A stretch of 64,000 bases of DNA, from positions 1 to 64,000 of IMG/VR virus record IMGVR_UViG_3300046660_000219. One strand, 5' to 3'. The translations under genes were made by a program, and so were the position numbers. This document shows positions 44,701 through 61,124 of the stretch, piece after piece (the stretch's first letter is position 1; each line of letters opens with the position of its first letter). The notes under the pieces are model-generated. The model worked only from the letters and a program-made list of their open reading frames with translations, did no database searches and was not told the origin of the DNA.

Positions 44701-44718
44701 TCGCAAGGAAATAGTATT

Positions 44719-45084
44719 ATGAGTGTAGCTGTTCTGGTGTCTTCGGACCTAACTAATGCGGGTGGCGCGTTGGTCACTGATACCTTTTCTACTGTCACCG
44801 GTACGACGTATACAGTGCAGTCTACTGACGCCGGCAAGATCTTGCGCTTCACTTCGGCGACGGCTGTAACGGTAACTTTACCAGCATTGACTGCGGGCTT
44901 CAATTGTCTGTGGCGTCAAGTTGGTGCTGGTAAGATTAGTTTCGTCGTAGCTGTGACTGATCCTGTGCAAACCTTGCGCAACACGGACGCTTTTTCAAAG
45001 TCGTCTGGCCAGTACGCCGAGGGCAGTCTGTCCGTGGATCTGGTCACGACTGATTGGTACCTGTCAGGTTCGTGCGGCGCGTAG
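44719..45084 (+). CDS. Small fibre-type beta protein carrying the AVLxxxDLxxAGG tag
   Basis: MSVAVLVSSDLTNAGG; TYTVQSTDAGKILRFT...QVGAG. Confidence 0.7.
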   Translation: MSVAVLVSSDLTNAGGALVTDTFSTVTGTTYTVQSTDAGKILRFTSATAVTVTLPALTAGFNCLWRQVGAGKISFVVAVTDPVQTLRNTDAFSKSSGQYAEGSLSVDLVTTDWYLSGSCGA

Positions 45085-45103
45085 CTGTTATTAGGAAACA
45101 GTA

Positions 45104-45232
45104 ATGAGCAAGCTCGCTAGACGAACGGTGCTTAAGCGTGGTGTACCTGCAAACGCACTGTATAATCGTAGCGGTTCGTTGGTGCTGACCAACAAGACCG
45201 GCTCTCTAATCCTGACCAAAAAGGTAAGCTAA
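45104..45232 (+). CDS. 42-aa MSKLxRR peptide
   Basis: Hand translation MSKLARRTVLKRGVPANALYNRSGSLVLTNKTGSLILTKKVS; AGGA RBS; paralogue at 52124. Confidence 0.75.
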   Translation: MSKLARRTVLKRGVPANALYNRSGSLVLTNKTGSLILTKKVS

Positions 45233-45233
45233 C

Positions 45234-46898
45234 ATGGCGAACGCCCGTGGCTATTTGGCCGACTACATTAACGGCCTGACCGGTGACGAGCGTATCGAGG
45301 TTGGCAATGCGCTAGCTGCGATTATCTCCTACGATCCGGCGGCACTGGACCTCTATACCCGCTTCACTTCTGCACCCAATGAGGCGTACAAGCGTGCAAT
45401 CTCAAACCGTATCCGCCTGCTGAAAGAGGCGAGCATTTGGCCCACCATTGACGTCACCTACGCTCTTGCGGCTGCTGATAGCCAAGCAGCGGCGCGTAAC
45501 TGGGTAGCGGACACGAAAAACCTAACGGCTACTGGCTCACCTACCTTTACGGCCAACAAAGGCTTCACGGGTAATGGCACGAGCGCATACCTCGATACCG
45601 GCGTCAATCCTGGTGCTGGCGGCACGAAGGCTACGCAAAATTCAGCGTGCATAAGCTTCTGGTGTTTGTCGCTGCGTAACCCGGACGCTAGTATTACTGT
45701 TGGTGCACGTAACGCCGGCGCAACCTCGTTCATGGACATGAACCCGCGCTTGACGGGCGAGCTGATCCTAGGTCGCCTGAACAACGCTGGCGGTGGTTTA
45801 TTCAACAACACCGTCACGCTAGGCCATTTTACCATTAATCGTCCAAACTCAACGACGATTGAAATCTATCGCGACGGCCAATTGATCGGCTCTAGTACCG
45901 TAGCGTCAACCACGCCGCCTAACGCTAATCTGTTGATCCTGGCGCGACAAGTTGCCGGTGGCGCAGCAGAGTCTTTCTCGTCTGATCAGATCGCTATGGT
46001 TACAATTGGTTCGGCTCTGACCTCGCAACAGGTTGCCGCTCTCTACAAGGCCGATTGCGCCTACCTTGACGCTATTGCAGGTTCTAGCGACCTCATCGCG
46101 GCGTTTGGTGATAGCCTTACGGCTACCGGATCGAGCACCTATCTGGCTACGGCCGGTGGCTTGTTCAGTCCGACGCGTTCACCTGCTAACAATGGTATCG
46201 GTGGGCAGACCAGTACGCAGGTTGCCGCACGTCAAGGTGGTCTACCGGTAAAGCTAACGGTAACTAGCAATCAAATTCCGGCGTCGGGCACTGTTGCAGT
46301 GACAGCTAAGTCCATCGGTGACTACGGCGTCGACGATGGCCCAATCACGGTGAACGGCGCACAAAGTCTGGCTGGTACTTTGGCTGGTATTCCCGGTACG
46401 TTGGCGCGTGATGGTGCTGGCGCGTACACTTTCACGCGTACGGCTTCCGGCTCTATCACCGCATGTCCGCCGAACTCAGTCTTTACTGTCAGTCTTGCGA
46501 TTAACAGTAAGCAGATGACGCAGTGGCTTTGGGTTGGTACGAACTTCACGAGCCGTGCTTCTACCTTGGCTGATGCTGCCGCGATGATTGCGTTCCTGGG
46601 TCATAGTCGCTACCTTATCGTTGGTCCGTTGACCAAGACGACGGACAGTCCTTCCGTGGTCGCGGAAAAGGTTCAAACCAACACGGATCTAGCCGCCTTG
46701 TATGGCTCGAAATTCCGCAACATGTTGTCCATCCTGCAAGCCAGTAACGATGGTTCGGCGAACGACCTTGCGGACGTCGCCGCCGGCTATACGCCGCGTT
46801 CGCTTCGTGTGGATGAAGTTCACCTTACCACTACTGCTAATAACACTATCGTTGCCCCTACGATGTACAACGCGCATCTGGCCAACGGTTATGCTTAA
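45234..46898 (+). CDS. LamG/ConA-like lectin plus SGNH hydrolase, putative virion appendage protein
   Basis: FTGNGTSAYLDTG; GDSL, GIGGQ, GTN, DEVH. Confidence 0.75.
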   Translation: MANARGYLADYINGLTGDERIEVGNALAAIISYDPAALDLYTRFTSAPNEAYKRAISNRIRLLKEASIWPTIDVTYALAAADSQAAARNWVADTKNLTATGSPTFTANKGFTGNGTSAYLDTGVNPGAGGTKATQNSACISFWCLSLRNPDASITVGARNAGATSFMDMNPRLTGELILGRLNNAGGGLFNNTVTLGHFTINRPNSTTIEIYRDGQLIGSSTVASTTPPNANLLILARQVAGGAAESFSSDQIAMVTIGSALTSQQVAALYKADCAYLDAIAGSSDLIAAFGDSLTATGSSTYLATAGGLFSPTRSPANNGIGGQTSTQVAARQGGLPVKLTVTSNQIPASGTVAVTAKSIGDYGVDDGPITVNGAQSLAGTLAGIPGTLARDGAGAYTFTRTASGSITACPPNSVFTVSLAINSKQMTQWLWVGTNFTSRASTLADAAAMIAFLGHSRYLIVGPLTKTTDSPSVVAEKVQTNTDLAALYGSKFRNMLSILQASNDGSANDLADVAAGYTPRSLRVDEVHLTTTANNTIVAPTMYNAHLANGYA

Positions 46899-47016
46899 TA
46901 GTAGAATCGAGGTTGCACCAACCTTGGTAATTTAGTGCATGCAAGACGTGGCCCCGTTGCTTCATTGCTTCGGGGCCATTGTCGTATCCAGATTATCATT
47001 TGCGGTGGGACAACAC

Positions 47017-47790
47017 ATGGGGCGTAGGTCCAACTTCAAGCGCCATCCGCGCGACCTGTATAAGACGTGCGACATACGCGCCATCATACCTTTGTTGCCA
47101 CATATCAAACACGTTTCTGTTTACGCGGAAACGTGCGCAGGCGACTCCGATCTGGTGCGCCTGTTGCTACCACATGGCAAGCGACCAATTGCGCAGTACG
47201 ACATCGTTCCACTAAATAGAAGTGTAGAGCGACGGGACGCGTTCTCGCTTACTCGTGCTGATATGCGTGGCTGTGGTACTATTATCACCAATCCGCCGTG
47301 GGATAGGAAGCTGTTACATCCGCTGATAATGCACTTCCTGTCGCTGGGCGTGGACGTGTGGTTGCTGTTTGACGCGGCATGGTGTCAGACTTTGCAATCC
47401 GTGCCGTTTATGCCATACTGTCGCAAGGTGGTAGCAGTCGGTCGGGTCTGTTGGTTTCCCAAGACCAAACAGACCGGCAAAGAAGATGCTAGCTGGTACC
47501 ATTTCTCACCGTACAATGTCGGCGAAGACACCCTGTTCTTTGGCCGTATACCTTCCGACGCCATAAAGGGACAACATGGCTCGCACCTACAGTTTCAAGA
47601 CGAAAGCCGAGGCCGCAAGGTTCAAGCCCACGTACGAGGCGGCCAACAACGCCTTCCACAACGGCGACAGCATAATGCTGGACTCGGACTTCGAAGCCCT
47701 CAAAGAAGCGCTGCTGCCGTGGTATCCGGAAATAGAAAGCCACATCGGCGCAACGCAAAACGCTTCAGCACGCATGGTGCCTCTGCCTAA
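47017..47790 (+). CDS. DNA amino-methyltransferase (NPPW motif)
   Basis: MGRRSNF..RDLYKT, ETCAGDSDL, IITNPPW. Confidence 0.8.
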   Translation: MGRRSNFKRHPRDLYKTCDIRAIIPLLPHIKHVSVYAETCAGDSDLVRLLLPHGKRPIAQYDIVPLNRSVERRDAFSLTRADMRGCGTIITNPPWDRKLLHPLIMHFLSLGVDVWLLFDAAWCQTLQSVPFMPYCRKVVAVGRVCWFPKTKQTGKEDASWYHFSPYNVGEDTLFFGRIPSDAIKGQHGSHLQFQDESRGRKVQAHVRGGQQRLPQRRQHNAGLGLRSPQRSAAAVVSGNRKPHRRNAKRFSTHGASA

Positions 47791-49429
47791 TGCGATGACC
47801 AGTCAGGTTAAGGCGCGCAAAGATACGATTCACAAGTACGTGGATCGCATCGGACCTGACACCCACGGTTCAGCCAAAGCCGATGGCTCATCGTTGCAGA
47901 TCGTCAACGTCAAAGGCGTCAAGAAATTGTACTCTAGAGGTGACGCCAAGACCAATACCGGTCAAGACGTTAGCCATCTAATACCATTGTTGAAGATTGG
48001 TGAATGTCCGCCCGGTTACGCGATCCGCTTTGAGTGCGTGCTGACACGCGCGGCCTTTGAGCAAGTAAAAGTCATCACCAAGGGTAAGCGCATCAAGGAT
48101 TACACAGCGGCGCGTAACGTGGCGTCCAGTGGGATCGTCAACAACTCCCGCCCAGACCCTGCGATAGTTGCTCTCGCGTCTTGCCCGGCTTTTACTATTT
48201 ACAAGCCGAAGATGACGCCGCGCCAAGCCTTCGCCAGACTAGTTGAGCTGGGTTGGGAAGTGCCGCTCAATCAACCAATCACCGATCTGTCCCCTAGAGC
48301 ACTAACCCTATTGCTGAAGACGTGGGAGCGTACCGTTCCGTACGACATCGACGGTATCGTGCTGTCAAAGAACGTGCACGAAGCGCCAGTAGCCGGTAGC
48401 AATCCGCACCACAGCGTTGCGTTCAAGGTAGATAAGCCGCCACAAAAGGTAGTTGTCAGCAAGGTTGTTTGGGAGGCTTCACAATATGGTAGACTCAAAC
48501 CAGTCGCCCATTTCGTTACACCCGTCAACCTCAACGGAGCCGAGGTCAGTAAAGCCACCGCTCACGACGCAAGAATGGTTCGCACTAAACGTATTGGGCC
48601 AGGAGCAGAAATCTTCATTATTCGGTCCGGGGAAGTTATTCCGAAGATCGTCGGTGTAGCCAAGCCTGCACTTAAAGCGTCGTTCCCTAAAAAGGGTACG
48701 TACACGTGGAACGGTGCGAACATCGAGGCAGTGGGTGACAACTACCGGGCCGAGATCCTGACCCGTCAGCGTGTAGCGTTCTTCGCCGACATCGGCGTGC
48801 TTGGCCTAGGCGAGTCCGTGGCGTCCAAGCTGACGGCCCTGTCGATCCCAGAAATCGCCCGCAAGAGCCCGATTGAGCTACGGGCGCTGGGTGTGGGCCA
48901 AGCGGACTCAGTAAAGCTCCCAGCGGCCATTAAAAAGGCCCTGGAGACGACCTCCATGCCACGGCTCATGGCCGCGTCGTCGGTGTTTGGTTCTGGGTTC
49001 GGTCTGACCAAGGCCAATGCTGTGTGGGCTGTGCTAAAAGGTAACCCACCTAAAACCCGCGCGGAGCTTGTCGAACGCGTGGTCGCGCTGCATGGCTTCT
49101 CCAAGGTATCCGCTGAGTCGTTCGCCGCACGTTATGCGCAGTGGCTAAAGTTCCTCAAGGACTTACCCTTTAAACCGATCGTATCTGGCGGCTCTGGTAA
49201 ATTGGTCGGTAAGCTGTATGCGTTTTCCGAGTTCCGCGACAAGGAGCTGGAGAACTTCATCATAGACCAGGGTGGTCAAGTTAAAGGTAGCGTATCGAAA
49301 GCAACAACTGCTGTGTTCGCCCCTCCCGGTGCTAACAGCACTAAAGCGCAAAAGGCTAGATTGCTACAGGTGCCAATCGTACCGCCTAGCCAAGCGCGCG
49401 ACTTTATCGGGTATGAGCCTAAACCATAG
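47576..49429 (+). CDS. NAD+-dependent DNA ligase
   Basis: DSDFE, KADG, YDIDGIV, AFK, IRSGEVIPKI, HhH and BRCT-like tail. Confidence 0.9.
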   Translation: MARTYSFKTKAEAARFKPTYEAANNAFHNGDSIMLDSDFEALKEALLPWYPEIESHIGATQNASARMVPLPNAMTSQVKARKDTIHKYVDRIGPDTHGSAKADGSSLQIVNVKGVKKLYSRGDAKTNTGQDVSHLIPLLKIGECPPGYAIRFECVLTRAAFEQVKVITKGKRIKDYTAARNVASSGIVNNSRPDPAIVALASCPAFTIYKPKMTPRQAFARLVELGWEVPLNQPITDLSPRALTLLLKTWERTVPYDIDGIVLSKNVHEAPVAGSNPHHSVAFKVDKPPQKVVVSKVVWEASQYGRLKPVAHFVTPVNLNGAEVSKATAHDARMVRTKRIGPGAEIFIIRSGEVIPKIVGVAKPALKASFPKKGTYTWNGANIEAVGDNYRAEILTRQRVAFFADIGVLGLGESVASKLTALSIPEIARKSPIELRALGVGQADSVKLPAAIKKALETTSMPRLMAASSVFGSGFGLTKANAVWAVLKGNPPKTRAELVERVVALHGFSKVSAESFAARYAQWLKFLKDLPFKPIVSGGSGKLVGKLYAFSEFRDKELENFIIDQGGQVKGSVSKATTAVFAPPGANSTKAQKARLLQVPIVPPSQARDFIGYEPKP

Positions 49430-49458
49430 CCTAACCTTCGGCTAATTTACTATTGAGC

Positions 49459-49493
49459 AAGCGCGCTGGGTTCACCGCTCAGCGCGCTTTTTT
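49459..49493 (+). terminator. Intrinsic terminator
   Basis: AAGCGCGCTGGG..CTCAGCGCGCTTTTTT. Confidence 0.8.
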
Positions 49494-49581
49494 GTTGTCT
49501 AAATCACAGGCAAAATAGTATAGTGCTTGCTAGTCACGGCCAGACTGAGCCTATACTTAAGCCATCACTATGGGACGAATA

Positions 49582-50136
49582 ATGAGCTACGTAAGAGACA
49601 TAACAGAACGCACCATGCACGAGATAGCTGACCATTTTGGGCCTAAGCCCTTGACGCAAACTGATCTGGCTAACTATTGGAACGCCAGTGCTGTTGCGCC
49701 GCGAAAGGCTATGAAGCTGGACGTTACCGCGCGCCTAGCGCAAACAGGTGAGAAGGTCGTTACTACTATTAACGGTAAGGTGGAGACGGTAAATATCGCC
49801 AAGACTGAAAGCGTCGTAGTACGCAATCAAACAGGCGAAGAGTATATTCTGCCGTACTCTACCTTTAAAGATCAATACAGCGGACCACCAGTTAATGGAA
49901 CCTATCAGGAATACGAAAGCATCGGCTTCCGCTATGTCATGCCGTACGATGGCAACGCTACGCAGCTAGAGGCGTCGTGGGGTGAATTGCAGACGTTAGA
50001 GCCCGGCGACATGCTAGGTTGCCTGACTTCTGGTCCTAACGGTGACATCTACCGTATCGCCTACGACGCCTGGAAAGACGGTTACAGTTTCATCGATGAC
50101 GGAACTACCGACCCGCGCCTTAAGCTTACGGTCTAG
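49582..50136 (+). CDS. PGDYG-like domain protein with E14-x-A16 leader
   Basis: GEEYIL..F...Y, ASWGE, EPGDML, DIYRI. Confidence 0.6.
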   Translation: MSYVRDITERTMHEIADHFGPKPLTQTDLANYWNASAVAPRKAMKLDVTARLAQTGEKVVTTINGKVETVNIAKTESVVVRNQTGEEYILPYSTFKDQYSGPPVNGTYQEYESIGFRYVMPYDGNATQLEASWGELQTLEPGDMLGCLTSGPNGDIYRIAYDAWKDGYSFIDDGTTDPRLKLTV

Positions 50137-50147
50137 GAGCTTTATAG

Positions 50148-50663
50148 ATGAGCCACGTAGCTGCCAGACTCTCGCGCCTGTTTGCAGAATTCGCTCAACA
50201 AACCAGAGTTCAGCATGTGGTTATTGACGCCAAAAATGGTATGGGTGCGACGCCTAACGGCGCTGACATCGATTACTTTGGCGTCCAAGTTCGTATGAAG
50301 CCTCTTGTGTTTTTGGATCTAGCAGACAAGCTACGAGGCGGTGCACAACGCATTGCAGCTATAGCTAATAAAATCGAAGAAGGTGCTCCCATAGCACCAC
50401 CATTTCTTACTATTATGGTGCCGAGTAATTGGCGGGACGCTGATTTTTCCGGTGTGCTACCAAAGATCGTTGGACATGACGGTCGCCATAGAATGCGTGC
50501 TGTCGCGCAAGTATTTGGCCCAGAGCCTATACCAGTCAATCTTTTTCTAAAGTCGCCCGATCGTCAATGGCGGGGGTCTAACATTACGCCAGATGTTCTT
50601 GATCACCTTAGAAAGGGTATGATCGAGCAAGATGGTTCCCGTGTTGTACAAGATGCGTTCTAA
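50148..50663 (+). CDS. ParB/Srx-like domain protein with E14-x-A16 leader
   Basis: APPFL...IVGHDGRHRMRA. Confidence 0.65.
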   Translation: MSHVAARLSRLFAEFAQQTRVQHVVIDAKNGMGATPNGADIDYFGVQVRMKPLVFLDLADKLRGGAQRIAAIANKIEEGAPIAPPFLTIMVPSNWRDADFSGVLPKIVGHDGRHRMRAVAQVFGPEPIPVNLFLKSPDRQWRGSNITPDVLDHLRKGMIEQDGSRVVQDAF

Positions 50664-50674
50664 GGAAACAAGCC

Positions 50675-51202
50675 ATGAGCTTCGTCAAAGATATAGCAGA
50701 TAAAACCTTACGGGAAGTGGCTAATGCTTTTCCACTCGCGCACAGCCCGCACTACATCTATGACCCTGTAAATAGTTATCAGAGTGGCGCGGCTGCTGGT
50801 GCTTTTCTGTACTCGCAGGATCGCGGTAACTTCTGCCTTCTTCAACGTGGGCACGCCGGTGATCAATCCGGTACATGGGGCACGGCTGGCGGTTTATTAA
50901 ATCCAGGTGAATCAGAGGCCGATGCAATACCGCGTCTCCTGAAAAGCACTATTGGCTATATCGGTGAAATTGTAGCCCTGGTTCCCATCTACATTTACCA
51001 GCGTGCTGCTTTTACATACGAAACTTTCGCGGCTGTCGTGCGTGAAGAATTCGTACCAGATTTAACACCCGATATTACAGGTTTCCGGTGGGATAAATTC
51101 GGCCGCTGGCCTGATCCGTTGCACTACGGTTGGCAGGCGGTAATGGATGACAAAACTGCCTATGAGCGTGTGATGCAAGTAGACATCACTTACGGCCTGT
51201 AA
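50675..51202 (+). CDS. Nudix-fold protein, degenerate box, with E14-x-A16 leader
   Basis: LLQR...GTWGTAGGLLNPGES...RLLKSTIGY. Confidence 0.7.
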   Translation: MSFVKDIADKTLREVANAFPLAHSPHYIYDPVNSYQSGAAAGAFLYSQDRGNFCLLQRGHAGDQSGTWGTAGGLLNPGESEADAIPRLLKSTIGYIGEIVALVPIYIYQRAAFTYETFAAVVREEFVPDLTPDITGFRWDKFGRWPDPLHYGWQAVMDDKTAYERVMQVDITYGL

Positions 51203-51264
51203 CGATAATACTAGATCAGTATCCGCCTAATTTAAGTACTGAATAGCCCTAAGAGGAATACACC

Positions 51265-52113
51265 ATGGAACTCTGCCTTGCTATCATGCTGGCGGCTAAG
51301 AAGGCCGGTATCCTCGCTGGCGGTGACGGCAAGGACGGCACGCACGTCTATACCGTTGTTGACGCCCGTGATCCGGTTACCGTGGTCATTCGGCCGACTG
51401 GTCGTGCTACCCTTTCTACCGTTGAGAGTGACAAGGAACACCACTTCACGCTGAATGACGAGGATGACGTCGCTTCGCTGTTCGAGACCCTGGCCAAGAT
51501 GTTGATTGAGGAAAATCTCGACACCAAGGCTAACCGCTTGCTCAAGATTATCGAGTCAATGGGCGCTCAAGCCGACTCGGAGATTGAAGCGGACGGTGAC
51601 AATGCTACAGTTTCCGCCGATGACTCGGAAGAGGACGATACCAGTGAAGACGATGAAGAAGAGTACGAAGAGGAAGCTCGCGTGACCCAACCTTCTTTGC
51701 TGTCTAACAAGAGCGCCGCCTTAGACCTTTTTGAGCAAGAGTTAGCCACGGCGGCACAGCTTCCTATGCATATGCCTGCTGTGGATTTGGTTGTCGCTCC
51801 CGTTGAAACGGCGGCTAGCGCGTTAATGTCGTCGTGCGTTGATATGGTAGTGCTGACCAACATGACGAAGGGTGATTTCACGGTCTTTCAGATCATGGCA
51901 GCCTTAGCCGAAATGGTTGGTCATACCGACGCCGCGCGTATCTTCAACGCTGTGCAAACCTTCCACGAAGTAAATGGTATTCTGCCAGGCGGAGTAGGCG
52001 AACTGGCAGACCAGTGGATCTACAAGCTCATGGGCTATGTGGTTGACACGGCGGGTCCGATTACTGGTGCCGAGGTGCGCGGTACGCTCATCTCGTACAT
52101 GCCTATGATTTAG
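51265..52113 (+). CDS. Acidic hypothetical protein, putative head protein
   Basis: GAGGA RBS; acidic linker, EEA/ELA/ETA motifs. Confidence 0.7.
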   Translation: MELCLAIMLAAKKAGILAGGDGKDGTHVYTVVDARDPVTVVIRPTGRATLSTVESDKEHHFTLNDEDDVASLFETLAKMLIEENLDTKANRLLKIIESMGAQADSEIEADGDNATVSADDSEEDDTSEDDEEEYEEEARVTQPSLLSNKSAALDLFEQELATAAQLPMHMPAVDLVVAPVETAASALMSSCVDMVVLTNMTKGDFTVFQIMAALAEMVGHTDAARIFNAVQTFHEVNGILPGGVGELADQWIYKLMGYVVDTAGPITGAEVRGTLISYMPMI

Positions 52114-52123
52114 GAGCACCGTT

Positions 52124-52252
52124 ATGAGCAAACTCACTAGACGCTCTGTTGTGCATGGTAGCAGTGCTACCGTTTTACGCTCCGCTATTAATGGCGCAGT
52201 CCTTGTTTCTGCCATAAATGGTAAATTGTTGACTAGTGCTCGGAGCACCTAA
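52124..52252 (+). CDS. 42-aa MSKLxRR peptide
   Basis: Hand translation MSKLTRRSVVHGSSATVLRSAINGAVLVSAINGKLLTSARST; AGGAG RBS. Confidence 0.75.
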   Translation: MSKLTRRSVVHGSSATVLRSAINGAVLVSAINGKLLTSARST

Positions 52253-52253
52253 C

Positions 52254-53798
52254 ATGACCGTTCTAAACGAACTTGAATTGGCTTCTGCTGGTGGGGCTAC
52301 GGCTGCTAGTGTTCGTCAGCGGGCTATCTTGTCGGCACTACGGTTTACGCCTGGGGTATTGCCGCTGGCGGCTTCCGCTCCTACCGTAACGGTAGCTACT
52401 AACGGCACAGCGACAATCACCAGTACGGTTGACGTGTCAAAGACTACACCTAACACAACGATACCTGTAACGAATGCGAAAATCGCTACTGTTGGTACTC
52501 CGTTGAGAGCTGTGAATTCACAGCTTTTCATGGGTAATAGTATTCAACAAGATGCCGCTAACACCGCGACATCGCGTCGGTCCAATCGACAGCGTTATCG
52601 TTTTTTGTTTGACGGTCCAGTGTTTGAAGCCGCTTTTACCAATCGCCAGGGTCGCGTTTGCATCATGGTCGATGGTGAGATGGTGTTCAATGCTCAAACA
52701 GAGCCGCGTCTCCCTATACAGTTATTGAACGACCAAAATGCGTCATTGGTAAAGGTAGATTTCGGTACTAACACGCCGTCTCTTTACGCGTCCTTCGTTC
52801 AAAACAACGGCGCGCCCGCCGTTGGTGGTAGCGGTTACGTGGTAGGCGAAGTTATTACTATGACAGGTGGGACTTTTACTGCACCTGCAAAAATAAAGGT
52901 AACAGCGATAAATGCCGGTGCCGTGCTCTCGGGGCAGATCGTAGATCCTGGCATTTATTCAGTGTTCCCAAACAATAACGTCGCACAGGGATCAACCACA
53001 GGGTCTGGGACTGGTGCGACGTGGAACCTAGTCTCTAGTGCTAGACATTCGGTACGACGTATGCGCCGTATTGAAATTATAACGTCTGGCGATAACTATC
53101 AGCCATACGTGATAGGTATCAATGTTGGTGCACAAGATTGCGTGCAGCCGTGGCCCGTAGTTGGTCCGCGCATCCTGTTCCTTGGTGACAGTCTTGTCGC
53201 TAATACCTTTTCTGACTGGCCGACTGGTGGTTTTGCGGATCTATCTGGTCAGTTTCTTGGCCTGGATGACATCTGGATTTCTGGTCGCAGCGGCGAAGGG
53301 TATTTGCAGCAAGTTAGTGGCGTCAAGTTGCGTGATCGCCTAATCAACGATGTGTACGCATACACCCCGGACATCATTGTTACCTGCATGGGCTACAATG
53401 ATAAGGCGCAAGATCCTACGGCGCTACAAGCCGAGGTGCAGGCCTGTCATGCTGACCTTCTAACCAATCTGCCCAATGCATTCCATTTCGCGATGAACGC
53501 CCATCGTGATTACTTAACTAGCCTTACTCCTCCAGCTAACGTCACAAATGCTATCGCAGCCGGTATTAATGCGGCCTACGCATCTTATGCTAATCGGGCG
53601 CGATTTATCGACAGTGTAGCCTTGGGTTGGGATGTTGGTGGTAGTGGTACCGTAAAAGCACCGACTGGTGTTGGTACGAGTGATTTCTGGATATCCAGCG
53701 ATACACTGCACATGACGCAGGCTGGCCACGAGCGCCGCGCCTACTTGCTAGCGCAGGCTATCTACTCAGCTTCGCGGTCTATTCTGCTGAACATCTAG
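52254..53798 (+). CDS. SGNH hydrolase with fibre-like insert and variant tag
   Basis: MTVLNELELASAGG; GGSGYVVGE insert; GDSL, GYND, DTLH. Confidence 0.8.
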   Translation: MTVLNELELASAGGATAASVRQRAILSALRFTPGVLPLAASAPTVTVATNGTATITSTVDVSKTTPNTTIPVTNAKIATVGTPLRAVNSQLFMGNSIQQDAANTATSRRSNRQRYRFLFDGPVFEAAFTNRQGRVCIMVDGEMVFNAQTEPRLPIQLLNDQNASLVKVDFGTNTPSLYASFVQNNGAPAVGGSGYVVGEVITMTGGTFTAPAKIKVTAINAGAVLSGQIVDPGIYSVFPNNNVAQGSTTGSGTGATWNLVSSARHSVRRMRRIEIITSGDNYQPYVIGINVGAQDCVQPWPVVGPRILFLGDSLVANTFSDWPTGGFADLSGQFLGLDDIWISGRSGEGYLQQVSGVKLRDRLINDVYAYTPDIIVTCMGYNDKAQDPTALQAEVQACHADLLTNLPNAFHFAMNAHRDYLTSLTPPANVTNAIAAGINAAYASYANRARFIDSVALGWDVGGSGTVKAPTGVGTSDFWISSDTLHMTQAGHERRAYLLAQAIYSASRSILLNI

Positions 53799-54657: not shown

Positions 54658-56040
54658 ATGGCTACTGCCGTTTTGTCGGCTTCTGATCTCGCCACGGCGG
54701 GTGGTTCGATCAATCTTTCGACGCGTTTGCGTCGCCTTGCGGAAAGGGCTGCGCTAAGTAACCCTTTCGATACGCCGCCTTTGGTGGTTCCACCCGACTA
54801 CGCTAACTCTACGGCGCTCCTGCAAGGGCACGTCGTCAAGAGTGGCGGTAACATGTTCATGACGGTGACGGCTGGTACTACTGCATCTAGCGGTACGCCG
54901 TCTACAGCCAATGGTGACGCCAATACTAACGGTACGGCGGCCCTGGCTTTCATGGGACCTATACCGCGCACCGCCGACGATCCTAGCGCACCTACTGTTA
55001 CTTTCGTAACGAGTAACCCGGCGCTCGGCGTTGTCTGGGACCCGGTTGGTAATCCTACTCTTTATCGTGCACTAGGTGCTACGCCGCAAGCCTATCGTAC
55101 GTCTCTCTGGGAGCTGCGTTCTTTCGTCCCGGCTGCTAGTGCGGCTACTGTTTGTCGTAGCGCGGTCATTCAGACGATCGTGGACGATTTCAAGTTCGCT
55201 GTCTCCATCCCGTCGAATTCGCAAAGTGTGCGTATCGCTATTGACGGTCAATTCTACAGTGTGTCGAGCTGGAACCCTGGTGGTTCTGACTCCTGGGCTG
55301 TTTTTGACTACACCGGCAAAGCCGCGAAGAAGCATCGCCTCGTTAGTGTTTACACTAACAAGAGCACTAGCTATTTCGGTGGCGTGCAAACGACCACGGC
55401 TGGACAGATTCACACGCCACCCGTCTCTGACACCATCAGAATGGTAGAATGTGCTGACAGCCTTGGCGCTGGTGCTGGTCCTGGCCCGTGGGGTGCGGGT
55501 AACGCCCCGGCTGTCGCTTTCGGTTCGATGATCGGCGTCGAAGATGTGTGGGTGCTGTCTACCGGCTCGACCGGCGACATCGCTAACGCTACTAACACTG
55601 CGTACAATTACGCAGAGCGCGTTCCGCAGATCATTGCTCTCGCGCCGCATATCATTTGGATACCGACATCGACTAACGATCTCGTGTCCACTACGAGTGC
55701 GGTTACCGCCGCACGTGTCGCTACGCTGCAAGCGTTACGCGCTGGTTTGCCTAACGCAATCATCGTCAATGAAGGTATCTGGCCCGTTCTGAACGGTGGT
55801 AACACCGCTGCTGTGACGGCACTAGAGAACGCTGTAAAAGCGGCTCACGATACCGTTGTTGACGCGCGCATGTTCTGGGTTCCGCGTGCTACTGAAACGC
55901 CGCCGTGGATCACCAGCAACAACCGTGGTTGGAACATCGCGGCCGACGGCATTCACCCGCCTGACGCGGGTTCGTTGTACATCGCCCGTCAGCGTGCGCT
56001 CGCTTGGCGTCGCTACGTCCTACCGTTCTTGCAAGGCTAA
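54658..56040 (+). CDS. Tagged SGNH hydrolase
   Basis: MATAVLSASDLATAGG; ADSL, STND, DGIH. Confidence 0.8.
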   Translation: MATAVLSASDLATAGGSINLSTRLRRLAERAALSNPFDTPPLVVPPDYANSTALLQGHVVKSGGNMFMTVTAGTTASSGTPSTANGDANTNGTAALAFMGPIPRTADDPSAPTVTFVTSNPALGVVWDPVGNPTLYRALGATPQAYRTSLWELRSFVPAASAATVCRSAVIQTIVDDFKFAVSIPSNSQSVRIAIDGQFYSVSSWNPGGSDSWAVFDYTGKAAKKHRLVSVYTNKSTSYFGGVQTTTAGQIHTPPVSDTIRMVECADSLGAGAGPGPWGAGNAPAVAFGSMIGVEDVWVLSTGSTGDIANATNTAYNYAERVPQIIALAPHIIWIPTSTNDLVSTTSAVTAARVATLQALRAGLPNAIIVNEGIWPVLNGGNTAAVTALENAVKAAHDTVVDARMFWVPRATETPPWITSNNRGWNIAADGIHPPDAGSLYIARQRALAWRRYVLPFLQG

Positions 56041-56060
56041 CGCACAAAGGAAATACTATT

Positions 56061-57389
56061 ATGACAACTGCGGTCCTTGCTGCTTCAGATTTAGCCACGG
56101 CTGGTGGTGCGTTAGCTAACGGGTCGCGCTCGTTCACTGGTACGCGCGTCTATACGGGCATGGGTGTAACTGCGTCTACCGCCTATCCTGGCTACACTTG
56201 GCAACAAATGGTAGCTGCGCCTGGACCTTTTGACGCTGTGCGCTTGATTTTCGCCAACACTACCAACGCTGCCGTGACGATTGACGCGGTGTGTTGCGGC
56301 GCTACGTCTAGCATTGCCGCTTATGATAACGTCTCAGGTACGGGTGTCAGCGGTCGTGCGGCACAATGGGTGCTAGGGAAATTTACAGCACCGGGAGCGG
56401 CTAGCACAACGGCTGGTGTAATGCCTGCCAACACCAACGCTGACATTACGGTAGAAGCGCTGGCGGGTGGTGCTACCTTTGCTACCATTCCTTCGCTCTT
56501 CTATTCCGACTGGATGGCTTGTGAGAGTGTAGCGCGCACGGATGGCGGTACAAAGCCGTTGGTTTTGGTGCGCGCTTACATTTCCCAGGCTGGTGCTATT
56601 CCGCTGTTTGGTACGAACTCATCGATCCCGGATTGGGATGACGAGACCAAGATCGGACTGGTTATTCAGAACCGACAGAAGGTGAATGACTTCGTCACCG
56701 TTAACAACGGTAGCTACACTTTTGCCGGCGAATTCCCGAACAATCCCATTCTTGGCGTTGAGTTCGCCATGCGCGTTCCTACTATTACGATGGTAGGCAT
56801 TGGCGATAGTAAGGTGCGCGGTCAGGCCAGCACGCCTGACGGCTACAATTATATGGAGATTTTAGCTAACTCTGTCAGCACTTTGACGGCTCCTGTCATA
56901 CCGGCCATTTACGGATGGGGCGGCCAACAGACGTCGTACAATTTCTCGCGCTGGCAGAAGCTTATTGCGGCTGGTATCAAACCACAAATTGCGATCTTCT
57001 CGCCGTTCTCTCAGAACAACTGGACAGGTACGGCCAGCCAAGTGTCGTCGGCGCAATATGCTACTATTCAATTCGTACGCTCCTGTTGCGAACGCGGTAT
57101 CTTCCCTATCCTCGTGACCGGCGAACCTATTGGTGCGGTTGACGACAGCAGCCCTACTCTACAAGCAGATAATGCTAGAAAGCTGGTGAACACTTTCATC
57201 CGCAATCTTGAGAGCACTTACGTGGGTGTCTTCGACAACGCAACGGTTATGGGTGACGGTGCTACGCCAGAACGGTATAAGCCATCTATGGTTAGCTCTG
57301 ACCACGTGCACCCCAACCTTGTCGGTCATCAAGCTGCCGCTACAGCGGCGTTGCCGAAACTGCAAGCGATCCTCGCGCGTATTCGCTAG
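56061..57389 (+). CDS. Tagged SGNH hydrolase
   Basis: MTTAVLAASDLATAGG; GDSK, SQNN, DHVH. Confidence 0.8.
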   Translation: MTTAVLAASDLATAGGALANGSRSFTGTRVYTGMGVTASTAYPGYTWQQMVAAPGPFDAVRLIFANTTNAAVTIDAVCCGATSSIAAYDNVSGTGVSGRAAQWVLGKFTAPGAASTTAGVMPANTNADITVEALAGGATFATIPSLFYSDWMACESVARTDGGTKPLVLVRAYISQAGAIPLFGTNSSIPDWDDETKIGLVIQNRQKVNDFVTVNNGSYTFAGEFPNNPILGVEFAMRVPTITMVGIGDSKVRGQASTPDGYNYMEILANSVSTLTAPVIPAIYGWGGQQTSYNFSRWQKLIAAGIKPQIAIFSPFSQNNWTGTASQVSSAQYATIQFVRSCCERGIFPILVTGEPIGAVDDSSPTLQADNARKLVNTFIRNLESTYVGVFDNATVMGDGATPERYKPSMVSSDHVHPNLVGHQAAATAALPKLQAILARIR

Positions 57390-57410
57390 CACATTCAAGG
57401 AATAAATAGT

Positions 57411-58571
57411 ATGACCACAGCAGTTCTCGCCGCGACGGATCTATCTAAGGCAGGCGGCGCGCTAAGGCAGTTTCGCGCGGCGTTCTCCAAAACCGGTACG
57501 CTGGGAAATACCGATACTACCGGTATTTCGGATGGTGTGGCCACTTCAGAAACCAGTCGTGATGTCTTCATGTCGCCGCCGTATCAAGTTAGCGACATTC
57601 AACTGTGCTTCAGCAATATCTACATCAACTCATCCGGCGAAGCTGTCACTACTAACGACATAACGGTACAAGCGAACGTCGAGATCGCAGGTGTGTCTTA
57701 TCCGCTGTTCCAGGCCGGTCGCCGTAACATGGTGCTGGAGCCGGGTGCGGTTGACGTACCGTTTGATCCACTAGCCATCGACATTCCCGCTAACACTGCG
57801 ATGTACTATCGGGTCTACGTTAGTGTTTCGTCTGGTGGCGTGTGGCCGCGTGGGCGTTTCGGCCGCCATAATCGCGCAGGCGGTATTACTGCTGGCGCGA
57901 ACTCTACGGCGGCTATTGGTACGCTACCTAACGATCAAGGCCAGTACATTTACGGTCCCAGCCTAGTGCTAGGTCGTACCGTTGGTAACTCGGCTCCTAG
58001 TGTTCTTGTTGTTGGTGATAGCCTCGTGGCTGGGCAAGGTGACACTGGCGACGCTAACGGCGCAGTCGGCTTCGCGGAACGCGCACTGACTGGTGTAGTA
58101 GGTTACACTACCCTTACCAAGTCCGGCTATCTGATGACGTCGCTCACCAACTCGCACACGCGGTCGCTGGCGCGCTGCACGCAGTTCTGCTCATCGGCCA
58201 TCTTGGAGCTTGGCTCTAACGATATTTTCGGCTCGCACGTCAACCTTGCCACCATGCAAAGCCGTGCGGCGGCTGGTGCCGCGCTCCTGAAGAATCGTGG
58301 TCTCAAGGTCTTTATGACTACTATTATGCCACGTTCGAGTGGCGGTGTGTCGGCTAACCCTACCGATAGCGCAACCACGGCGGCGTACAATGATTGGCTG
58401 CGCCTAGGTCAGTCATTCATGGACGGTCTGTTCGACATTGCTGACATCTGTGAGACGACGCGGAATTCGGGTCTGTGGAAGCCGGCGCTGCAACCGGGTG
58501 ATGGCATTCACCCCAACGGTGCTGGTTACGCTACTATTTCTGCGGGCATAATCACCAGTCAATTGGTCTAG
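57411..58571 (+). CDS. Tagged SGNH hydrolase
   Basis: MTTAVLAATDLSKAGG; GDSL, GSND, DGIH. Confidence 0.85.
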   Translation: MTTAVLAATDLSKAGGALRQFRAAFSKTGTLGNTDTTGISDGVATSETSRDVFMSPPYQVSDIQLCFSNIYINSSGEAVTTNDITVQANVEIAGVSYPLFQAGRRNMVLEPGAVDVPFDPLAIDIPANTAMYYRVYVSVSSGGVWPRGRFGRHNRAGGITAGANSTAAIGTLPNDQGQYIYGPSLVLGRTVGNSAPSVLVVGDSLVAGQGDTGDANGAVGFAERALTGVVGYTTLTKSGYLMTSLTNSHTRSLARCTQFCSSAILELGSNDIFGSHVNLATMQSRAAAGAALLKNRGLKVFMTTIMPRSSGGVSANPTDSATTAAYNDWLRLGQSFMDGLFDIADICETTRNSGLWKPALQPGDGIHPNGAGYATISAGIITSQLV

Positions 58572-58594
58572 CCACACATAGAAAAGGTAGGATC

Positions 58595-58936
58595 ATGAAT
58601 GAGCGCCCGGTAATCCGCCGTTTGGCTAGTAAGGACGATCCAGAAGGCGTGACACGTTTTCGTTTCCCTTGTCCCGGCTGTGAGTATGGTCATTGGGTAC
58701 GTGTGAACGCAGCAGATTCTCCCAACTGGACGTGGAATGGCGACTTCGTGCGTCCTACCTTTTCTCCTAGCGTGCATGTCTTTCCTGGCGGCAGCCTGCA
58801 GACTAAAGCCGAAGGTGCGCGAGACGGCACGTGTCACAGTCACGTCATTGATGGCAACATACAGTTTCTTAGCGATTGCTGGCACGACCTCAAGAATCAG
58901 ACTGTGCCGCTACCGCCACTCGACTACGGAGATTGA
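58595..58936 (+). CDS. DUF6527-like Cys/His protein
   Basis: CPGC..H, WTWNGD..PTFSPSV, CHSHV.DG.IQFLSDC.H. Confidence 0.75.
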   Translation: MNERPVIRRLASKDDPEGVTRFRFPCPGCEYGHWVRVNAADSPNWTWNGDFVRPTFSPSVHVFPGGSLQTKAEGARDGTCHSHVIDGNIQFLSDCWHDLKNQTVPLPPLDYGD

Positions 58937-58939
58937 ACC

Positions 58940-59209
58940 ATGGCAGTTAAAGACGGCCGCACGCATAAGAGTAAAGCACATCGCAAAGCTATTTCAGACG
59001 GTCTACGCGCTTACCACGCCAACAAGAAGTTGGGTGCTTACTACAAGCTCGATTCTCCAAGTAAGTGGCGTAAAAACCTAAAGAGTTCTATGGCAAAGCT
59101 AGAGCGTGAGATTAAAAATAATTCCGCTAGAGGGCTGCCAGCAAATAGAGAAAAGGCTATGCTGGCCAGTTATGCCAAGCTGCTGGCTAAAGGCCCTCCT
59201 AGCAATTAA
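58940..59209 (+). CDS. Small basic protein
   Basis: K/R-rich 89 aa. Confidence 0.65.
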   Translation: MAVKDGRTHKSKAHRKAISDGLRAYHANKKLGAYYKLDSPSKWRKNLKSSMAKLEREIKNNSARGLPANREKAMLASYAKLLAKGPPSN

Positions 59210-59227
59210 TAATAGGATTAGCAAATT

Positions 59228-59623
59228 ATGCCTAGCAGCAAGTGGTTCAACAGCCTGTCGCCACAGCGCAGGAAAGCTTACCTTAAACAGCACAAGAAAT
59301 CCAAGTTCCACGGCAAGCCTGTCAGTGGAGCCAAACCGGTGATTGGCGCACGCCCTAGCCTGGGTGGTGCTATCCAACCGTCCACGGCGGTTAAACCCGG
59401 CCAAAAGGCCGCTGTAAAGCCGCCTGGGAGCCACTTACAGGGCGTGAAGCCCGGTGCGCCTAACCCCGAGGCCGAAAAGCCGATCAAGCTTGTCCCCAAG
59501 GCTCCTAGCGATCACGACGGCAAGGCCGCGCCCGCTAGAGACGTCAAGAAACCTGACCCGGCGCGGGTAAAGGGTTTCACCAACAAGGTCGGCGACGCGA
59601 TCCGTCGTGCGCTCAAGTCGTAA
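59228..59623 (+). CDS. Basic protein with WxxxxSP..Y...H..SK motif
   Basis: WFNSLSPQRRKAYLKQHKKSK. Confidence 0.7.
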   Translation: MPSSKWFNSLSPQRRKAYLKQHKKSKFHGKPVSGAKPVIGARPSLGGAIQPSTAVKPGQKAAVKPPGSHLQGVKPGAPNPEAEKPIKLVPKAPSDHDGKAAPARDVKKPDPARVKGFTNKVGDAIRRALKS

Positions 59624-59635
59624 GGAAATAGTAAC

Positions 59636-60880: not shown

Positions 60881-60881
60881 G

Positions 60882-61112
60882 GTGGCGAAGGTTGTCAGCA
60901 AGAAAGGTAGCACGCAGAAAGATTGGTGGCACAGAATGTCACCGGAAGCGCGTGCTACCTATTTCCACAGCCACCCCAACAGCAAGCTACGCAAGGTGTC
61001 TGGCGTCAAGAAACCACTAGCCATTGGCGAGCTGTTGACCCTGCAAGACAAGCGGTTGCGCAAGCGTCGCGCCAAGTGGCACGACAGTAAAACCCGGCCT
61101 ATCCAGATCTAG
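60882..61112 (+). CDS. Basic protein with WxxxxSP..Y...H..SK motif
   Basis: WWHRMSPEARATYFHSHPNSK; GTG start right after upstream stop. Confidence 0.65.
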   Translation: MAKVVSKKGSTQKDWWHRMSPEARATYFHSHPNSKLRKVSGVKKPLAIGELLTLQDKRLRKRRAKWHDSKTRPIQI

Positions 61113-61124
61113 AAGGTTATGTAA

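What the first reader, a model, noticed from the sequence alone, without database searches (positions are those of the whole stretch)
45104..52256. Two unannotated 42-aa MSKLxRR peptides each coupled to an SGNH gene
Seen: 45104-45232 and 52124-52252 are both exactly 42 aa, start MSKL(A/T)RR(T/S)V, contain an internal tandem repeat (NRSGSLVLT/NKTGSLILT; VLRSAING/VLVSAING), have good RBSs, and join the next gene through the same TAA-C-ATG junction. They precede the only SGNH genes that lack the tag (45234) or have a divergent one (52254). Inference: trans-acting adaptor or chaperone peptides replacing the tag; +1 recoding into the enzyme is also possible.
Basis: partly seen in the sequence, partly recalled or inferred. 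Interest (0 to 1): 0.6.

Follow-up and report, generated by a model that had tools for sequence, protein, structure and literature searches.

The report
Mini-adaptor peptides for phage enzyme cargo
The two 42-residue ORFs are real genes of an undescribed family of tiny phage proteins that always sit just upstream of a surface-sugar-cutting enzyme gene and most likely tether that enzyme to the virus particle through a matching tag at the enzyme's start.

Summary
Both 42-codon ORFs, their shared MSKLxRRxV start, the 9-residue internal repeats, the RBSs and the TAA-C-ATG junctions are there.

They are not chance ORFs. A profile search of 1.84 billion proteins found about 16 clusters of 42-74 aa relatives, none named or in Pfam, PHROGs or NCBIfam.

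In all 18 loci read, the small gene lies directly upstream of an enzyme gene: GDSL/SGNH esterase, alpha-L-fucosidase or unknown. These loci come from different phage types.

- **Two peptide types.** Type A ends in SAING-like repeats (pep2). Type B ends in NKxGS-like repeats (pep1).
- **Matching tags.** Each type pairs without exception with one N-terminal enzyme motif (13/13 and 5/5). Gene 45234 therefore has its own tag, type B.
- **Split peptide.** The N-terminal third follows the phage lineage. Recombination breakpoints fall in the Gly-rich linker.
- **Anchor form.** In one phage the same C-terminal repeat is fused to a 110-aa domain that a neighbouring esterase carries covalently.

Best reading: a two-part adaptor, with a lineage-specific anchor strand and a cargo-specific docking beta-meander.

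+1 recoding is not supported. Junction gaps of -1, 1, 2 and 3 nt occur, stop and pre-stop codons vary, and the downstream SD lies inside the last peptide codons. Binding itself remains untested.

The parts
45104..45232 (+). pep1: 42-aa mini-protein, type B. It has an N-terminal MSKLARRTV anchor segment, a Gly/Pro linker, and two NxxGSLxLT repeats at the C-terminus.
   Evidence: ORF and RBS. Family members P0009, P0011, P0012, P0015, P0021. Motif HMM hit at E 1.7e-21, the only one in the genome. Third-codon positions are the least conserved.
52124..52252 (+). pep2: 42-aa mini-protein, type A. It has an N-terminal MSKLTRRSV anchor segment followed by two (S)AINGxxLxS repeats and a C-terminal LTSARS motif.
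   Evidence: ORF. Relatives P0003, P0004 (E 3.4e-13), P0007, P0008, P0010, P0014, P0017, P0018, P0022. AF2 model: mean pLDDT 72.8, with 83-88 over residues 21-40 and beta bridges every 9 residues.
45234..46898 (+). Cargo of pep1: a 554-aa protein with a type B N-terminal tag (MANARGYLADYING...), a ConA-like/laminin-G region and a C-terminal SGNH-like esterase.
   Evidence: Pfam and PHROG (phrog_11419 tail fiber, E 2e-42). The same N-terminal motif follows type B peptides in L010, L012, L013 and L024. The C-terminus is 46% identical to the L005 cargo.
52254..53798 (+). Cargo of pep2: a 514-aa protein with the canonical type A tag (MTVLNELELASAGG), an Ig-like head-decoration-like region and a GDSL/SGNH esterase.
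   Evidence: Pfam Lipase_GDSL_2 E 6.8e-11 and phrog_9703. Tag alignment A4. Type A tag behind type A peptides in 13 of 13 loci.
45220..45236 (+). pep1/cargo junction: an AAAGG Shine-Dalgarno inside the last pep1 codons, then TAA, C, ATG.
   Evidence: The same SD-in-peptide arrangement occurs in all type B loci.
52242..52256 (+). pep2/cargo junction: a GGAG Shine-Dalgarno inside the SARS codons, then TAA, C, ATG.
   Evidence: An (A)GGAG lies within the conserved S-A-R-S codons in type A loci.
44719..45084 (+). 121-aa protein just upstream of pep1: a type A-like tag followed by a ~100-aa beta-sandwich knob. Homologous knob proteins precede MS(K/R)xxRR peptides in other phages.
   Evidence: 62% identical to the L008/L010 186-aa protein and 44% to the L025 upstream protein. 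AF2 pLDDT 77.5 with the tag region disordered. Foldseek best hit is the Pa223 capsid spike (E 1.2e-4), followed by T4 gp9/gp10 and CBA120 TSP4 N-terminal domains.
54658..62689 (+). Array of five further SGNH genes (54658-56040, 56061-57389, 57411-58571, 59636-60880, 61508-62689). All carry the phage-specific type A tag variant M-x-T-A-V-L-x-x-x-D-(L/I)-x-x-A-G-G and none has a peptide gene of its own. A sixth lies at genome position 83281-84516, outside the window.

Best explanation
pep1 and pep2 are translated, stand-alone adaptor mini-proteins with two functional parts.

1. **Anchor (inferred).** The N-terminal ~10-15 residues (MSKLxRRxV here) are specific to the phage lineage. They are inferred to dock onto a virion component of this phage. 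The knob protein encoded upstream of pep1 is one candidate, and a capsid or neck site is another.
2. **Docking module (partly shown, partly inferred).** After a Gly-rich linker, the C-terminal ~25 residues are predicted to form a small three-stranded beta-meander made of two 9-residue repeats with NG or NKxG turns. This part is specific to the cargo and is inferred to bind non-covalently the short N-terminal tag of the enzyme encoded immediately downstream. Type A repeats go with the M-x-V-L-N-x-x-E-L-x-A-G-G tag, and type B repeats with the M-A-N-A-x-G-Y-L-A-D-Y tag.
3. **Coupled translation (arrangement shown, purpose inferred).** The stop and start codons are adjacent and the enzyme's SD lies inside the last peptide codons. 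This would give matched amounts and let the two pieces meet as they are made.

The enzymes are carbohydrate esterases here, and an alpha-L-fucosidase elsewhere. They would then be displayed on the particle as receptor- or glycan-modifying appendages.

The cassette 'peptide C-terminus + junction + tag + enzyme' moves between phages by recombination in the linker, so a resident anchor can pick up new enzymes.

Shown: the genes exist, are conserved at protein level, are always coupled to an enzyme gene, co-vary with the tag, and have a mosaic structure. Inferred: physical binding, presence in the virion and the site of attachment.
For: 1. **Family.** Profile search: 22 hits at E<=1e-3, of which ~16 are true small proteins of 42-74 aa. 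The motif is always at the extreme C-terminus.
2. **Context.** In 18 of 18 loci read, the gene is directly upstream of an enzyme gene. Settings include a jumbo myovirus, an E217-like myovirus, tape-measure siphovirus-like prophages and baseplate-J phages.
3. **Covariation.** Type A peptide with type A tag in 13/13 loci, type B with type B tag in 5/5. The enzyme bodies behind one tag differ: an SGNH esterase and a fucosidase both follow type B tags.
4. **Mosaicism.**
   - L008 and L010 are 100% identical in DNA through the upstream gene and the first 12 peptide codons. They then diverge completely into type A and type B cassettes.
   - L021 and L024 behave likewise.
   - The window's pep1 and pep2 repeat the pattern within one genome.
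5. **Domain-fused form.** P0016 is a 110-aa domain plus type A repeats. That domain is 47% identical (E 3e-33) to the N-terminal domain that the neighbouring 507-aa esterase carries covalently.
6. **Protein-level selection.** Third-codon positions are the least conserved in both peptide and tag: 0.52 vs 0.66/0.69, and 0.40 vs 0.62/0.69.
7. **Fold.** AF2 gives periodic beta bridges at 17/19, 26/28 and 35/37 with pLDDT 83-88.
8. **Upstream knob.** MS(K/R)xxRR-type N-termini co-occur with a homologous knob protein upstream in three lineages.
9. **Precedents.**
   - The Pa223 capsid spike is anchored solely by its N-terminal 40 residues (bioRxiv 10.1101/2025.06.11.659172).
   - The phi24B esterase is held on the capsid by a 54-aa N-terminal domain (bioRxiv 10.64898/2026.04.10.717836).
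   - Short N-terminal docking peptides are known in K1-5/SP6/KP32-type systems (PMC6872550, PMC13352976).
Against: - There is no direct evidence of binding or of virion incorporation. The one co-folding job gave no answer.
- Covariation could partly reflect descent of two ancient cassettes whose adjacent parts are simply linked. The loci are not phylogenetically independent.
- Seven other type A-tagged proteins in this genome have no peptide gene. pep2 is the only SAING-motif protein encoded. Either pep2 serves them all, which sits badly with 1:1 translational coupling, or the tag can work without a peptide.
- The attachment site of the N-terminal part is unknown.
- pep2's codon usage is only borderline gene-like.
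Confidence: 0.55

Rival explanations
1. Assembly chaperone or co-folding factor. The peptide binds the nascent N-terminus of the enzyme, helps it fold, oligomerise or stay inactive in the cytoplasm, and is not retained in the virion.
For: It shares the coupling and covariation evidence of the adaptor model. Tight stop-start coupling suits co-translational action.
Against: - The lineage-specific N-terminal part is conserved, and recombination boundaries fall at the linker. This implies a second, phage-specific partner.
- P0016 carries a structural N-terminal domain shared with a full-length esterase.
- Known fibre chaperones are larger and usually encoded downstream. There was no HMM match to any.
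Confidence: 0.15
2. A purely regulatory leader ORF. Translating the small ORF only delivers ribosomes to the enzyme start by termination-reinitiation, and the peptide itself has no function.
For: The stop and start are 1 nt apart in most loci, and the SD of the enzyme gene lies within the last codons of the small ORF.
Against: - The amino-acid sequence is conserved while third-codon positions vary.
- The whole peptide, not only its 3' end, is conserved across distant phages.
- The motif also occurs as the C-terminus of 136- and 174-aa proteins.
- AF2 predicts an ordered repeat fold.
Confidence: 0.1
3. Programmed recoding. A +1 frameshift at the TAA fuses peptide and enzyme into one polypeptide.
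For: Both window junctions are TAA-C-ATG, and a 1-nt gap recurs in most other loci.
Against: - Gaps of -1 (L005, L020), 2 (L008, L021) and 3 nt (L027) also occur, so all three relative frames are used.
- The stop codons are TAA, TAG and TGA.
- The last sense codons differ (AGC, ACC, GCA, GAA, GCC, GTT, TCC, GCT), with no slippery pattern.
- Each enzyme has its own ATG and SD.
- No naturally fused homologue appeared among the profile hits.
Confidence: 0.03
4. A trans-acting export signal. The peptide is a free twin-arginine-like signal that carries the folded enzyme across the membrane by hitch-hiking.
For: The language-model look-alike search listed Tat-signal clusters at score 0.90. The window peptides have (T/A)-R-R-x-V-(L/V) near the N-terminus. 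Type A peptides end T-S-A-R-S, which resembles a signal-peptidase site.
Against: - No Tat-signal model (Pfam or NCBIfam) matches any of 10 members even at E<=10.
- Many members lack RR (P0003, P0007, P0009, P0012, P0015, P0016).
- Conserved Arg/Lys lie inside the would-be hydrophobic region.
- The tool itself rates a score of 0.90 with few shared features as a weak lead.
Confidence: 0.04
5. Chance ORFs in two regulatory intergenic regions.
For: The ORFs are short, pep2's codon usage is borderline, and ORFs also exist on the opposite strand.
Against: Homologues reach E down to 3e-13 in unrelated phages at the same position. Variation follows the codon-position pattern expected in the + frame.
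Confidence: 0.02

Closest known systems
Adaptor and branching systems for multiple receptor-binding proteins: K1-5/K1E/SP6 gp37, G7C gp66-gp63.1, CBA120 TSP2/TSP4, KP32 'anchor-branch' with a conserved docking peptide (PMC6872550, PMC13352976)
   Same: Enzymatic appendages carry a short conserved N-terminal peptide (7 to some tens of residues) that plugs non-covalently into a separately encoded piece. The anchor part is conserved within a phage group while the enzyme part is exchanged horizontally. Several enzymes can sit on one virion.
   Different: In those systems the socket is a T4gp10-like domain inside a protein of hundreds of residues. Here the partner is a free 42-74 aa protein with a repeat beta-meander, encoded immediately upstream and translationally coupled. 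The same family occurs in different phage morphotypes, next to tail genes or head genes. There is no sequence similarity to those systems.
Pa223 capsid spike gp52 (PDB 9ny6; bioRxiv 10.1101/2025.06.11.659172)
   Same: An N-terminal segment of about 40 residues is solely responsible for anchoring a trimeric appendage to the particle. Its C-terminal knob is the best structural match to the 121-aa protein upstream of pep1.
   Different: In Pa223 the anchor is covalently part of the spike. No enzyme is attached and there is no separate small gene.
phi24B gp84 NanS-p-type esterase as capsid decoration (bioRxiv 10.64898/2026.04.10.717836)
   Same: A carbohydrate esterase is displayed on a phage capsid through a very small (54-aa) N-terminal binding domain that ends up as a separate polypeptide.
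   Different: There the separation is by proteolysis of one precursor and the domain is DUF1737 (helix plus three strands, hexameric). The window peptides do not match DUF1737 or any other Pfam family and are encoded separately.
T4 long tail fibre joints (gp34-gp35-gp36-gp37)
   Same: Consecutive genes encode consecutive fibre segments joined non-covalently, C-terminus of one to N-terminus of the next (established knowledge).
   Different: The T4 segments are large trimeric proteins. No homology was found and no mini-protein is involved.

Membership tests
Adaptor/branching RBP systems (K1-5 gp37, KP32 anchor-branch type) | Cargo proteins carry a short conserved N-terminal docking peptide | tested here: met
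   Type A and type B N-terminal motifs are conserved across 18 loci, and on 9 proteins of this genome while the bodies differ.
Adaptor/branching RBP systems (K1-5 gp37, KP32 anchor-branch type) | The docking site is a T4gp10-like domain in the adaptor or primary RBP | tested here: not met
   The peptides are 42 aa with no such domain and no Pfam, PHROG or NCBIfam hit. The neighbouring 121-aa knob resembles T4 gp9/gp10 and TSP4 only weakly (Foldseek E 0.03-0.13; best hit Pa223 knob, E 1.2e-4).
Adaptor/branching RBP systems (K1-5 gp37, KP32 anchor-branch type) | Physical binding of adaptor and cargo, both present in the virion | not testable with these tools
   This needs pull-down, virion MS or cryo-EM. 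The single co-folding job returned no answer and is not used as evidence.
Programmed +1 frameshift (prfB type) | Conserved shift site (slippery codon before an in-frame stop) and a conserved relative frame of the two ORFs | tested here: not met
   Gaps of -1, 1, 2 and 3 nt occur, the codons before the stop vary, and all three stop codons are used.
Twin-arginine (Tat) signal peptide | S/T-R-R-x-F-L-K motif, an uncharged hydrophobic region, and a match to Tat-signal models | tested here: not met
   An RR-like motif is present in the window peptides but absent in many family members. Conserved R/K lie in the central region. No hit to PF10518 or the NCBIfam Tat models at E<=10.
DUF1737 capsid-binding domain of NanS-p esterases (phi24B gp84) | Sequence membership in Pfam DUF1737 | tested here: not met
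   No Pfam family matches at E<=10 for 8 small family members.
Phage tail-fibre assembly chaperones (Tfa, gp38, gp57A type) | Homology to known chaperone families, with the gene downstream of the fibre gene | tested here: not met
   No PHROG, Pfam or NCBIfam hit. The small gene is always upstream (18/18 loci).
GDSL/SGNH hydrolases (the downstream cargo) | Match to Lipase_GDSL/Lipase_GDSL_2 over the curated cut-off | tested here: met
   52254 scores 43.4 bits against a cut-off of 32.9. 45234 is below the cut-off (17.6 bits) but matches the esterase part of phrog_11419 at E 2e-42 and the L005 SGNH protein at 46% identity.

The most novel reading that the evidence does not exclude
The peptide's C-terminal beta-meander and the enzyme's N-terminal tag form a portable two-piece 'plug and socket'. 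Phages of unrelated architecture use it to hang exchangeable glycan-modifying enzymes on their particles.

In this jumbo phage a single species, pep2, would be the shared socket for all eight type A-tagged proteins (seven esterases and the knob protein). pep1 would serve the type B esterase. The result would be a virion carrying up to nine different appendages through two mini-adaptors that share one anchor sequence.
Probability: 0.3. Interest if true: 0.78.

Novelty: new variant of a known kind. Interest (0 to 1): 0.62.

Why it matters
- **Missed genes.** The family is absent from Pfam, PHROGs and NCBIfam, and sources call its members at most 'hypothetical protein'. Genes of this size are routinely skipped by gene callers, so a component that may decide which enzymes a phage displays is invisible in current annotations.
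- **Minimal connector.** If the adaptor model holds, this would be the smallest separately encoded receptor-binding-protein connector I know of. It would explain how enzyme modules move between phages with different tails and heads: recombination in a Gly-rich linker of a 130-nt gene.
- **Engineering use.** A pair of about 25 and 15 residues would be a compact natural docking system. It could be used to attach chosen enzymes to phage particles in laboratory phage-host systems.
- **Annotation rule.** The N-terminal tags allow prediction: an enzyme gene starting with either tag should be checked for an upstream mini-ORF.

Tried and rejected
- **Close relatives.** None was found.
  - Megablast of the region against cultured phages gave nothing.
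  - tblastn of either peptide against cultured phages gave nothing.
  - Single-protein locus searches with both esterases, the portal and the protease in IMG/VR gave nothing.
  - The two-peptide alignment in IMG/VR gave nothing.
- **Variant tag.** A DNA pattern for the phage-specific tag variant found no other viral contig.
- **Other collections.** Scans of reference genomes and JGI metagenomes each gave only one more locus. The family is rare or poorly called.
- **Co-folding.** pep2 was co-folded with the first 60 residues of 52254, each with my own small alignment. The verdict was 'no answer' (score 0.00, controls not run). This is no evidence either way.
- **Solved structures.** A sequence search of solved structures gave only chance-level matches: a cyanovirin decapeptide, and actinohivin at E 0.7.
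- **Tat-signal lead.** It came from the language-model search and was rejected after HMM tests and inspection of the family.
- **Spurious hits.** Four profile hits (P0005, P0006, P0013, P0020) are low-complexity, LRR or surface-repeat proteins, not relatives.
- **Expression.** No RNA run holds the phage, so expression could not be checked.
- **Step not taken.** I did not read the in-frame L027 junction through its stop to make an artificial fusion for folding, because no alternative code is shown by that genome.

Full report
**Setting.** The window is the first 64 kb of a 205,908-bp IMG/VR virus record with direct terminal repeats, rated complete. It comes from a rhizosphere metagenome.

It is a jumbo myovirus. 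Its portal (42588-44417) is ~31% identical to those of Rhizobium phage RHEph12, Pseudomonas phage PaBG and Erwinia phage Yoloswag. The order of the relevant genes is:
- portal;
- an 89-aa ORF;
- a 121-aa protein (44719-45084);
- pep1 and esterase 45234;
- NAD-ligase and other genes;
- pep2 and esterase 52254;
- prohead protease (53845);
- five more esterase genes;
- beyond the window, a 627-aa ORF of unknown function (62863-64746), a virion structural protein, the major head protein, sheath, baseplate genes and one more tagged esterase at 83281.

In RHEph12 the portal is followed directly by the ligase. The block holding pep1 is therefore an insertion relative to that phage.

**The observation.**
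- There are two 42-codon ORFs at the stated coordinates, sharing the start MSKL(A/T)RR(T/S)V.
- Each has two 9-residue repeats, with Gly at positions 24 and 33 in both.
- Shine-Dalgarno sequences lie 5 and 7 nt before the ATGs.
- Both junctions are identical, TAA-C-ATG.
- No other ORF in the genome has the MSKLxRR start or either repeat motif.
- The first nine codons of the two ORFs differ at five codons, three of them synonymously.
- Codon usage is gene-like for pep1 and borderline for pep2.
- Short contigs from two other rhizosphere studies are 100% identical across the pep1 start and the pep1/esterase junction. The one-base spacer is therefore not an assembly error.

**A real and undescribed family.** A word search with the two peptides found one relative, P0003. 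A profile of the three, run against 1.84 billion representative proteins, gave 22 hits at E<=1e-3.
- Four hits are repeat or low-complexity proteins.
- The remainder are 42-74 aa proteins, plus two longer ones (136 and 174 aa) with the motif at their extreme C-terminus.
- No member matches Pfam, PHROGs or NCBIfam, even at E<=10.
- Where a source names one, the name is 'hypothetical protein'.

The C-termini fall into two types:
- Type A has SAING-like repeats ending LTSARS (pep2).
- Type B has NK(S/T)GS-L-x-L-T repeats (pep1).

**Context.** I read 18 loci. In every one the small gene ends 0-3 nt before, or 1 nt inside, the start of an enzyme gene. The enzyme is usually a GDSL/SGNH esterase, in two lineages an alpha-L-fucosidase, and once unknown.

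The surrounding phages differ:
- an E217-like myovirus, where the pair lies between head/neck genes and the tail terminator (L008);
- tape-measure-bearing temperate phages, where it lies between tail and lysis genes (L005, L027);
- phages with Baseplate_J (L012/L023);
- a locus beside lysis genes and an integrase (L013);
- a Phenylobacterium MAG (L031).

**Covariation with an N-terminal tag.** Every enzyme behind a type A peptide starts with M-x-(x)-V-L-N-x-x-(E/D)-(L/I)-x-x-(A/G)-G-G (13/13). Every enzyme behind a type B peptide starts with M-(A/P)-(N/D)-A-x-G-Y-(I/L)-A-(D/A)-Y (5/5).
- Gene 45234 therefore does have a tag, of type B.
- Gene 52254 carries the canonical type A tag. The tag on the seven other proteins of this phage is a local variant with two extra N-terminal residues.
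- The enzyme bodies behind one tag type are unrelated. Type B tags precede both an SGNH esterase and a GH29-like fucosidase, sometimes with the catalytic domain starting within 25-40 residues.
- Recombination has therefore occurred downstream of the tag, but never between peptide C-terminus and tag.

**Mosaic peptide.**
- L008 and L010 are 100% identical in DNA through the upstream gene and the first 12 peptide codons. They lose all similarity at the Gly-rich linker, one continuing as type A and the other as type B.
- L021 and L024 do the same at ~85% identity.
- pep1 and pep2 show the pattern within one genome.
- The N-terminal third thus belongs to the resident phage, and the C-terminal two-thirds travel with the enzyme.
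- MS(K/R)xxRR-type N-termini occur in three lineages that all have a homologous knob protein encoded just upstream: the window's 121-aa protein, 62% identical to L008/L010 and 44% to L025.

**A domain-fused form.** In L011 the type A repeat sits at the end of a 136-aa protein, P0016. [quoted passage not shown] The same N-terminal domain is thus covalently joined to one enzyme and, in the adjacent pair, joined to the next enzyme only through 'repeat + tag'. This is the clearest hint that the repeat/tag pair replaces a peptide bond.

**Selection and fold.**
- Across loci, third-codon positions are the least conserved in both the peptide C-terminus and the tag. Selection therefore acts on the proteins, not on an RNA element.
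- AF2 with an 11-row alignment gives pLDDT 83-88 over residues 21-40 of pep2. Beta bridges lie at 17/19, 26/28 and 35/37, consistent with a three-stranded meander with NG turns. The N-terminal 15 residues are less confident.
- The 121-aa protein folds as a beta-sandwich knob with a disordered tag. Its best structural match is the Pa223 capsid spike (E 1.2e-4), followed by weak matches to T4 gp9/gp10 and the N-terminal domains of CBA120 TSP4.

**Recoding.** The one-base spacer is common (13 of 18 loci), but gaps of -1, 2 and 3 nt also occur. All three stop codons are used and the preceding codons vary. Each enzyme gene has an SD embedded in the last peptide codons: AGGAG within the S-A-R-S codons, or AAAGG in type B. 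That SD also explains part of the C-terminal sequence conservation. A uniform frameshift mechanism is excluded, and independent or coupled initiation is the simple reading.

**Mechanism proposed.** The peptide is a two-part adaptor: a lineage-specific N-terminal anchor strand, a flexible Gly linker, and a cargo-specific beta-meander that captures the enzyme's N-terminal tag.
- Coupled translation supplies the two in matched amounts.
- Published precedents show that about 40-54 residues suffice to hold an appendage or an esterase on a capsid (Pa223 gp52; phi24B gp84).
- They also show that 7-11-residue N-terminal peptides suffice to dock tailspikes on adaptors (K1-5, SP6, KP32; PMC6872550, PMC13352976).

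**What remains open.**
- Binding and virion presence are not shown. The single co-folding job gave no answer.
- Where the anchor docks is unknown. The genes lie in the head module here, next to tail or lysis genes elsewhere, and the knob protein is only a candidate.
- Seven tagged proteins here lack a peptide gene of their own, while pep2 is the only type A motif carrier in the genome. Either pep2 is shared or the tag can act alone.
- The 18 loci are not independent samples, so the perfect covariation overstates the statistical weight.

**Verdict.** This is a genuine, conserved, unannotated mini-protein family, functionally coupled to N-terminally tagged phage enzymes. It most likely acts as a minimal, separately encoded attachment adaptor. 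That makes it a new variant of the known adaptor / docking-peptide principle rather than a new principle.

Noticed in passing
window 54658-62689 and genome 83281-84516: The genome holds eight SGNH/GDSL esterase genes: seven by PF13472 plus 45234. Six of them, and the 121-aa knob protein, start with the same near-identical tag M-x-T-A-V-L-x-x-x-D-(L/I)-x-x-A-G-G. Several also share the upstream sequence aaggaaatagtaac-ATG, which suggests duplication or gene conversion that includes the RBS. Five lie between the prohead protease and the head genes, and one lies after the baseplate genes.
   Followed up: partly
window 58595-58936 and 61125-61511: Two paralogous DUF6527 proteins with a Cys-rich CPGCE motif (E 6e-12 and 3e-10) are interleaved with the esterase genes. 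Their function is unknown.
   Followed up: partly
window 44719-45084: This 121-aa protein is a type A-like tag plus a beta-sandwich knob. The best structural match is the Pa223 capsid spike, with weaker matches to T4 gp9/gp10 and CBA120 TSP4 N-terminal domains. Homologous knobs end Gordonia phage minor tail proteins. In Rhizobium phage P106B a homologous knob follows the coat-protein gene two genes on and directly precedes an esterase, with no small ORF between.
   Followed up: partly
window 46939-47790 vs 47576-49429: A 283-aa ORF with an N6-adenine-methyltransferase-like NPPW motif overlaps the annotated start of the NAD-ligase ORF by 215 nt. Its Arg-rich tail looks non-coding. The ligase probably starts further downstream, or there is a frameshift.
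   Followed up: no
window 56004-57389: The longest ORF starts at TTG 56004, but the conserved tag shows the real start is ATG 56061, 20 nt after the stop of the preceding esterase gene.
   Followed up: yes
window 44431-46898 compared with L019 (RHEph12): In the nearest cultured relative the portal gene is followed directly by the NAD-ligase gene. The 89-aa / knob / pep1 / esterase block is an insertion at that point.
   Followed up: partly
L013 1943-6315; L012 1189-3687: In other phages the peptide-enzyme pair lies next to surface-polysaccharide-modifying genes: an Acyl_transf_3 acyltransferase, and an RfbT-like methyltransferase. This hints that these enzymes act on O-antigen or exopolysaccharide.
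   Followed up: no
L011 3332-3457: A 41-aa hydrophobic ORF lies directly before the 507-aa esterase in L011, with a 0-nt gap. It does not belong to the peptide family and looks like a membrane peptide.
   Followed up: no
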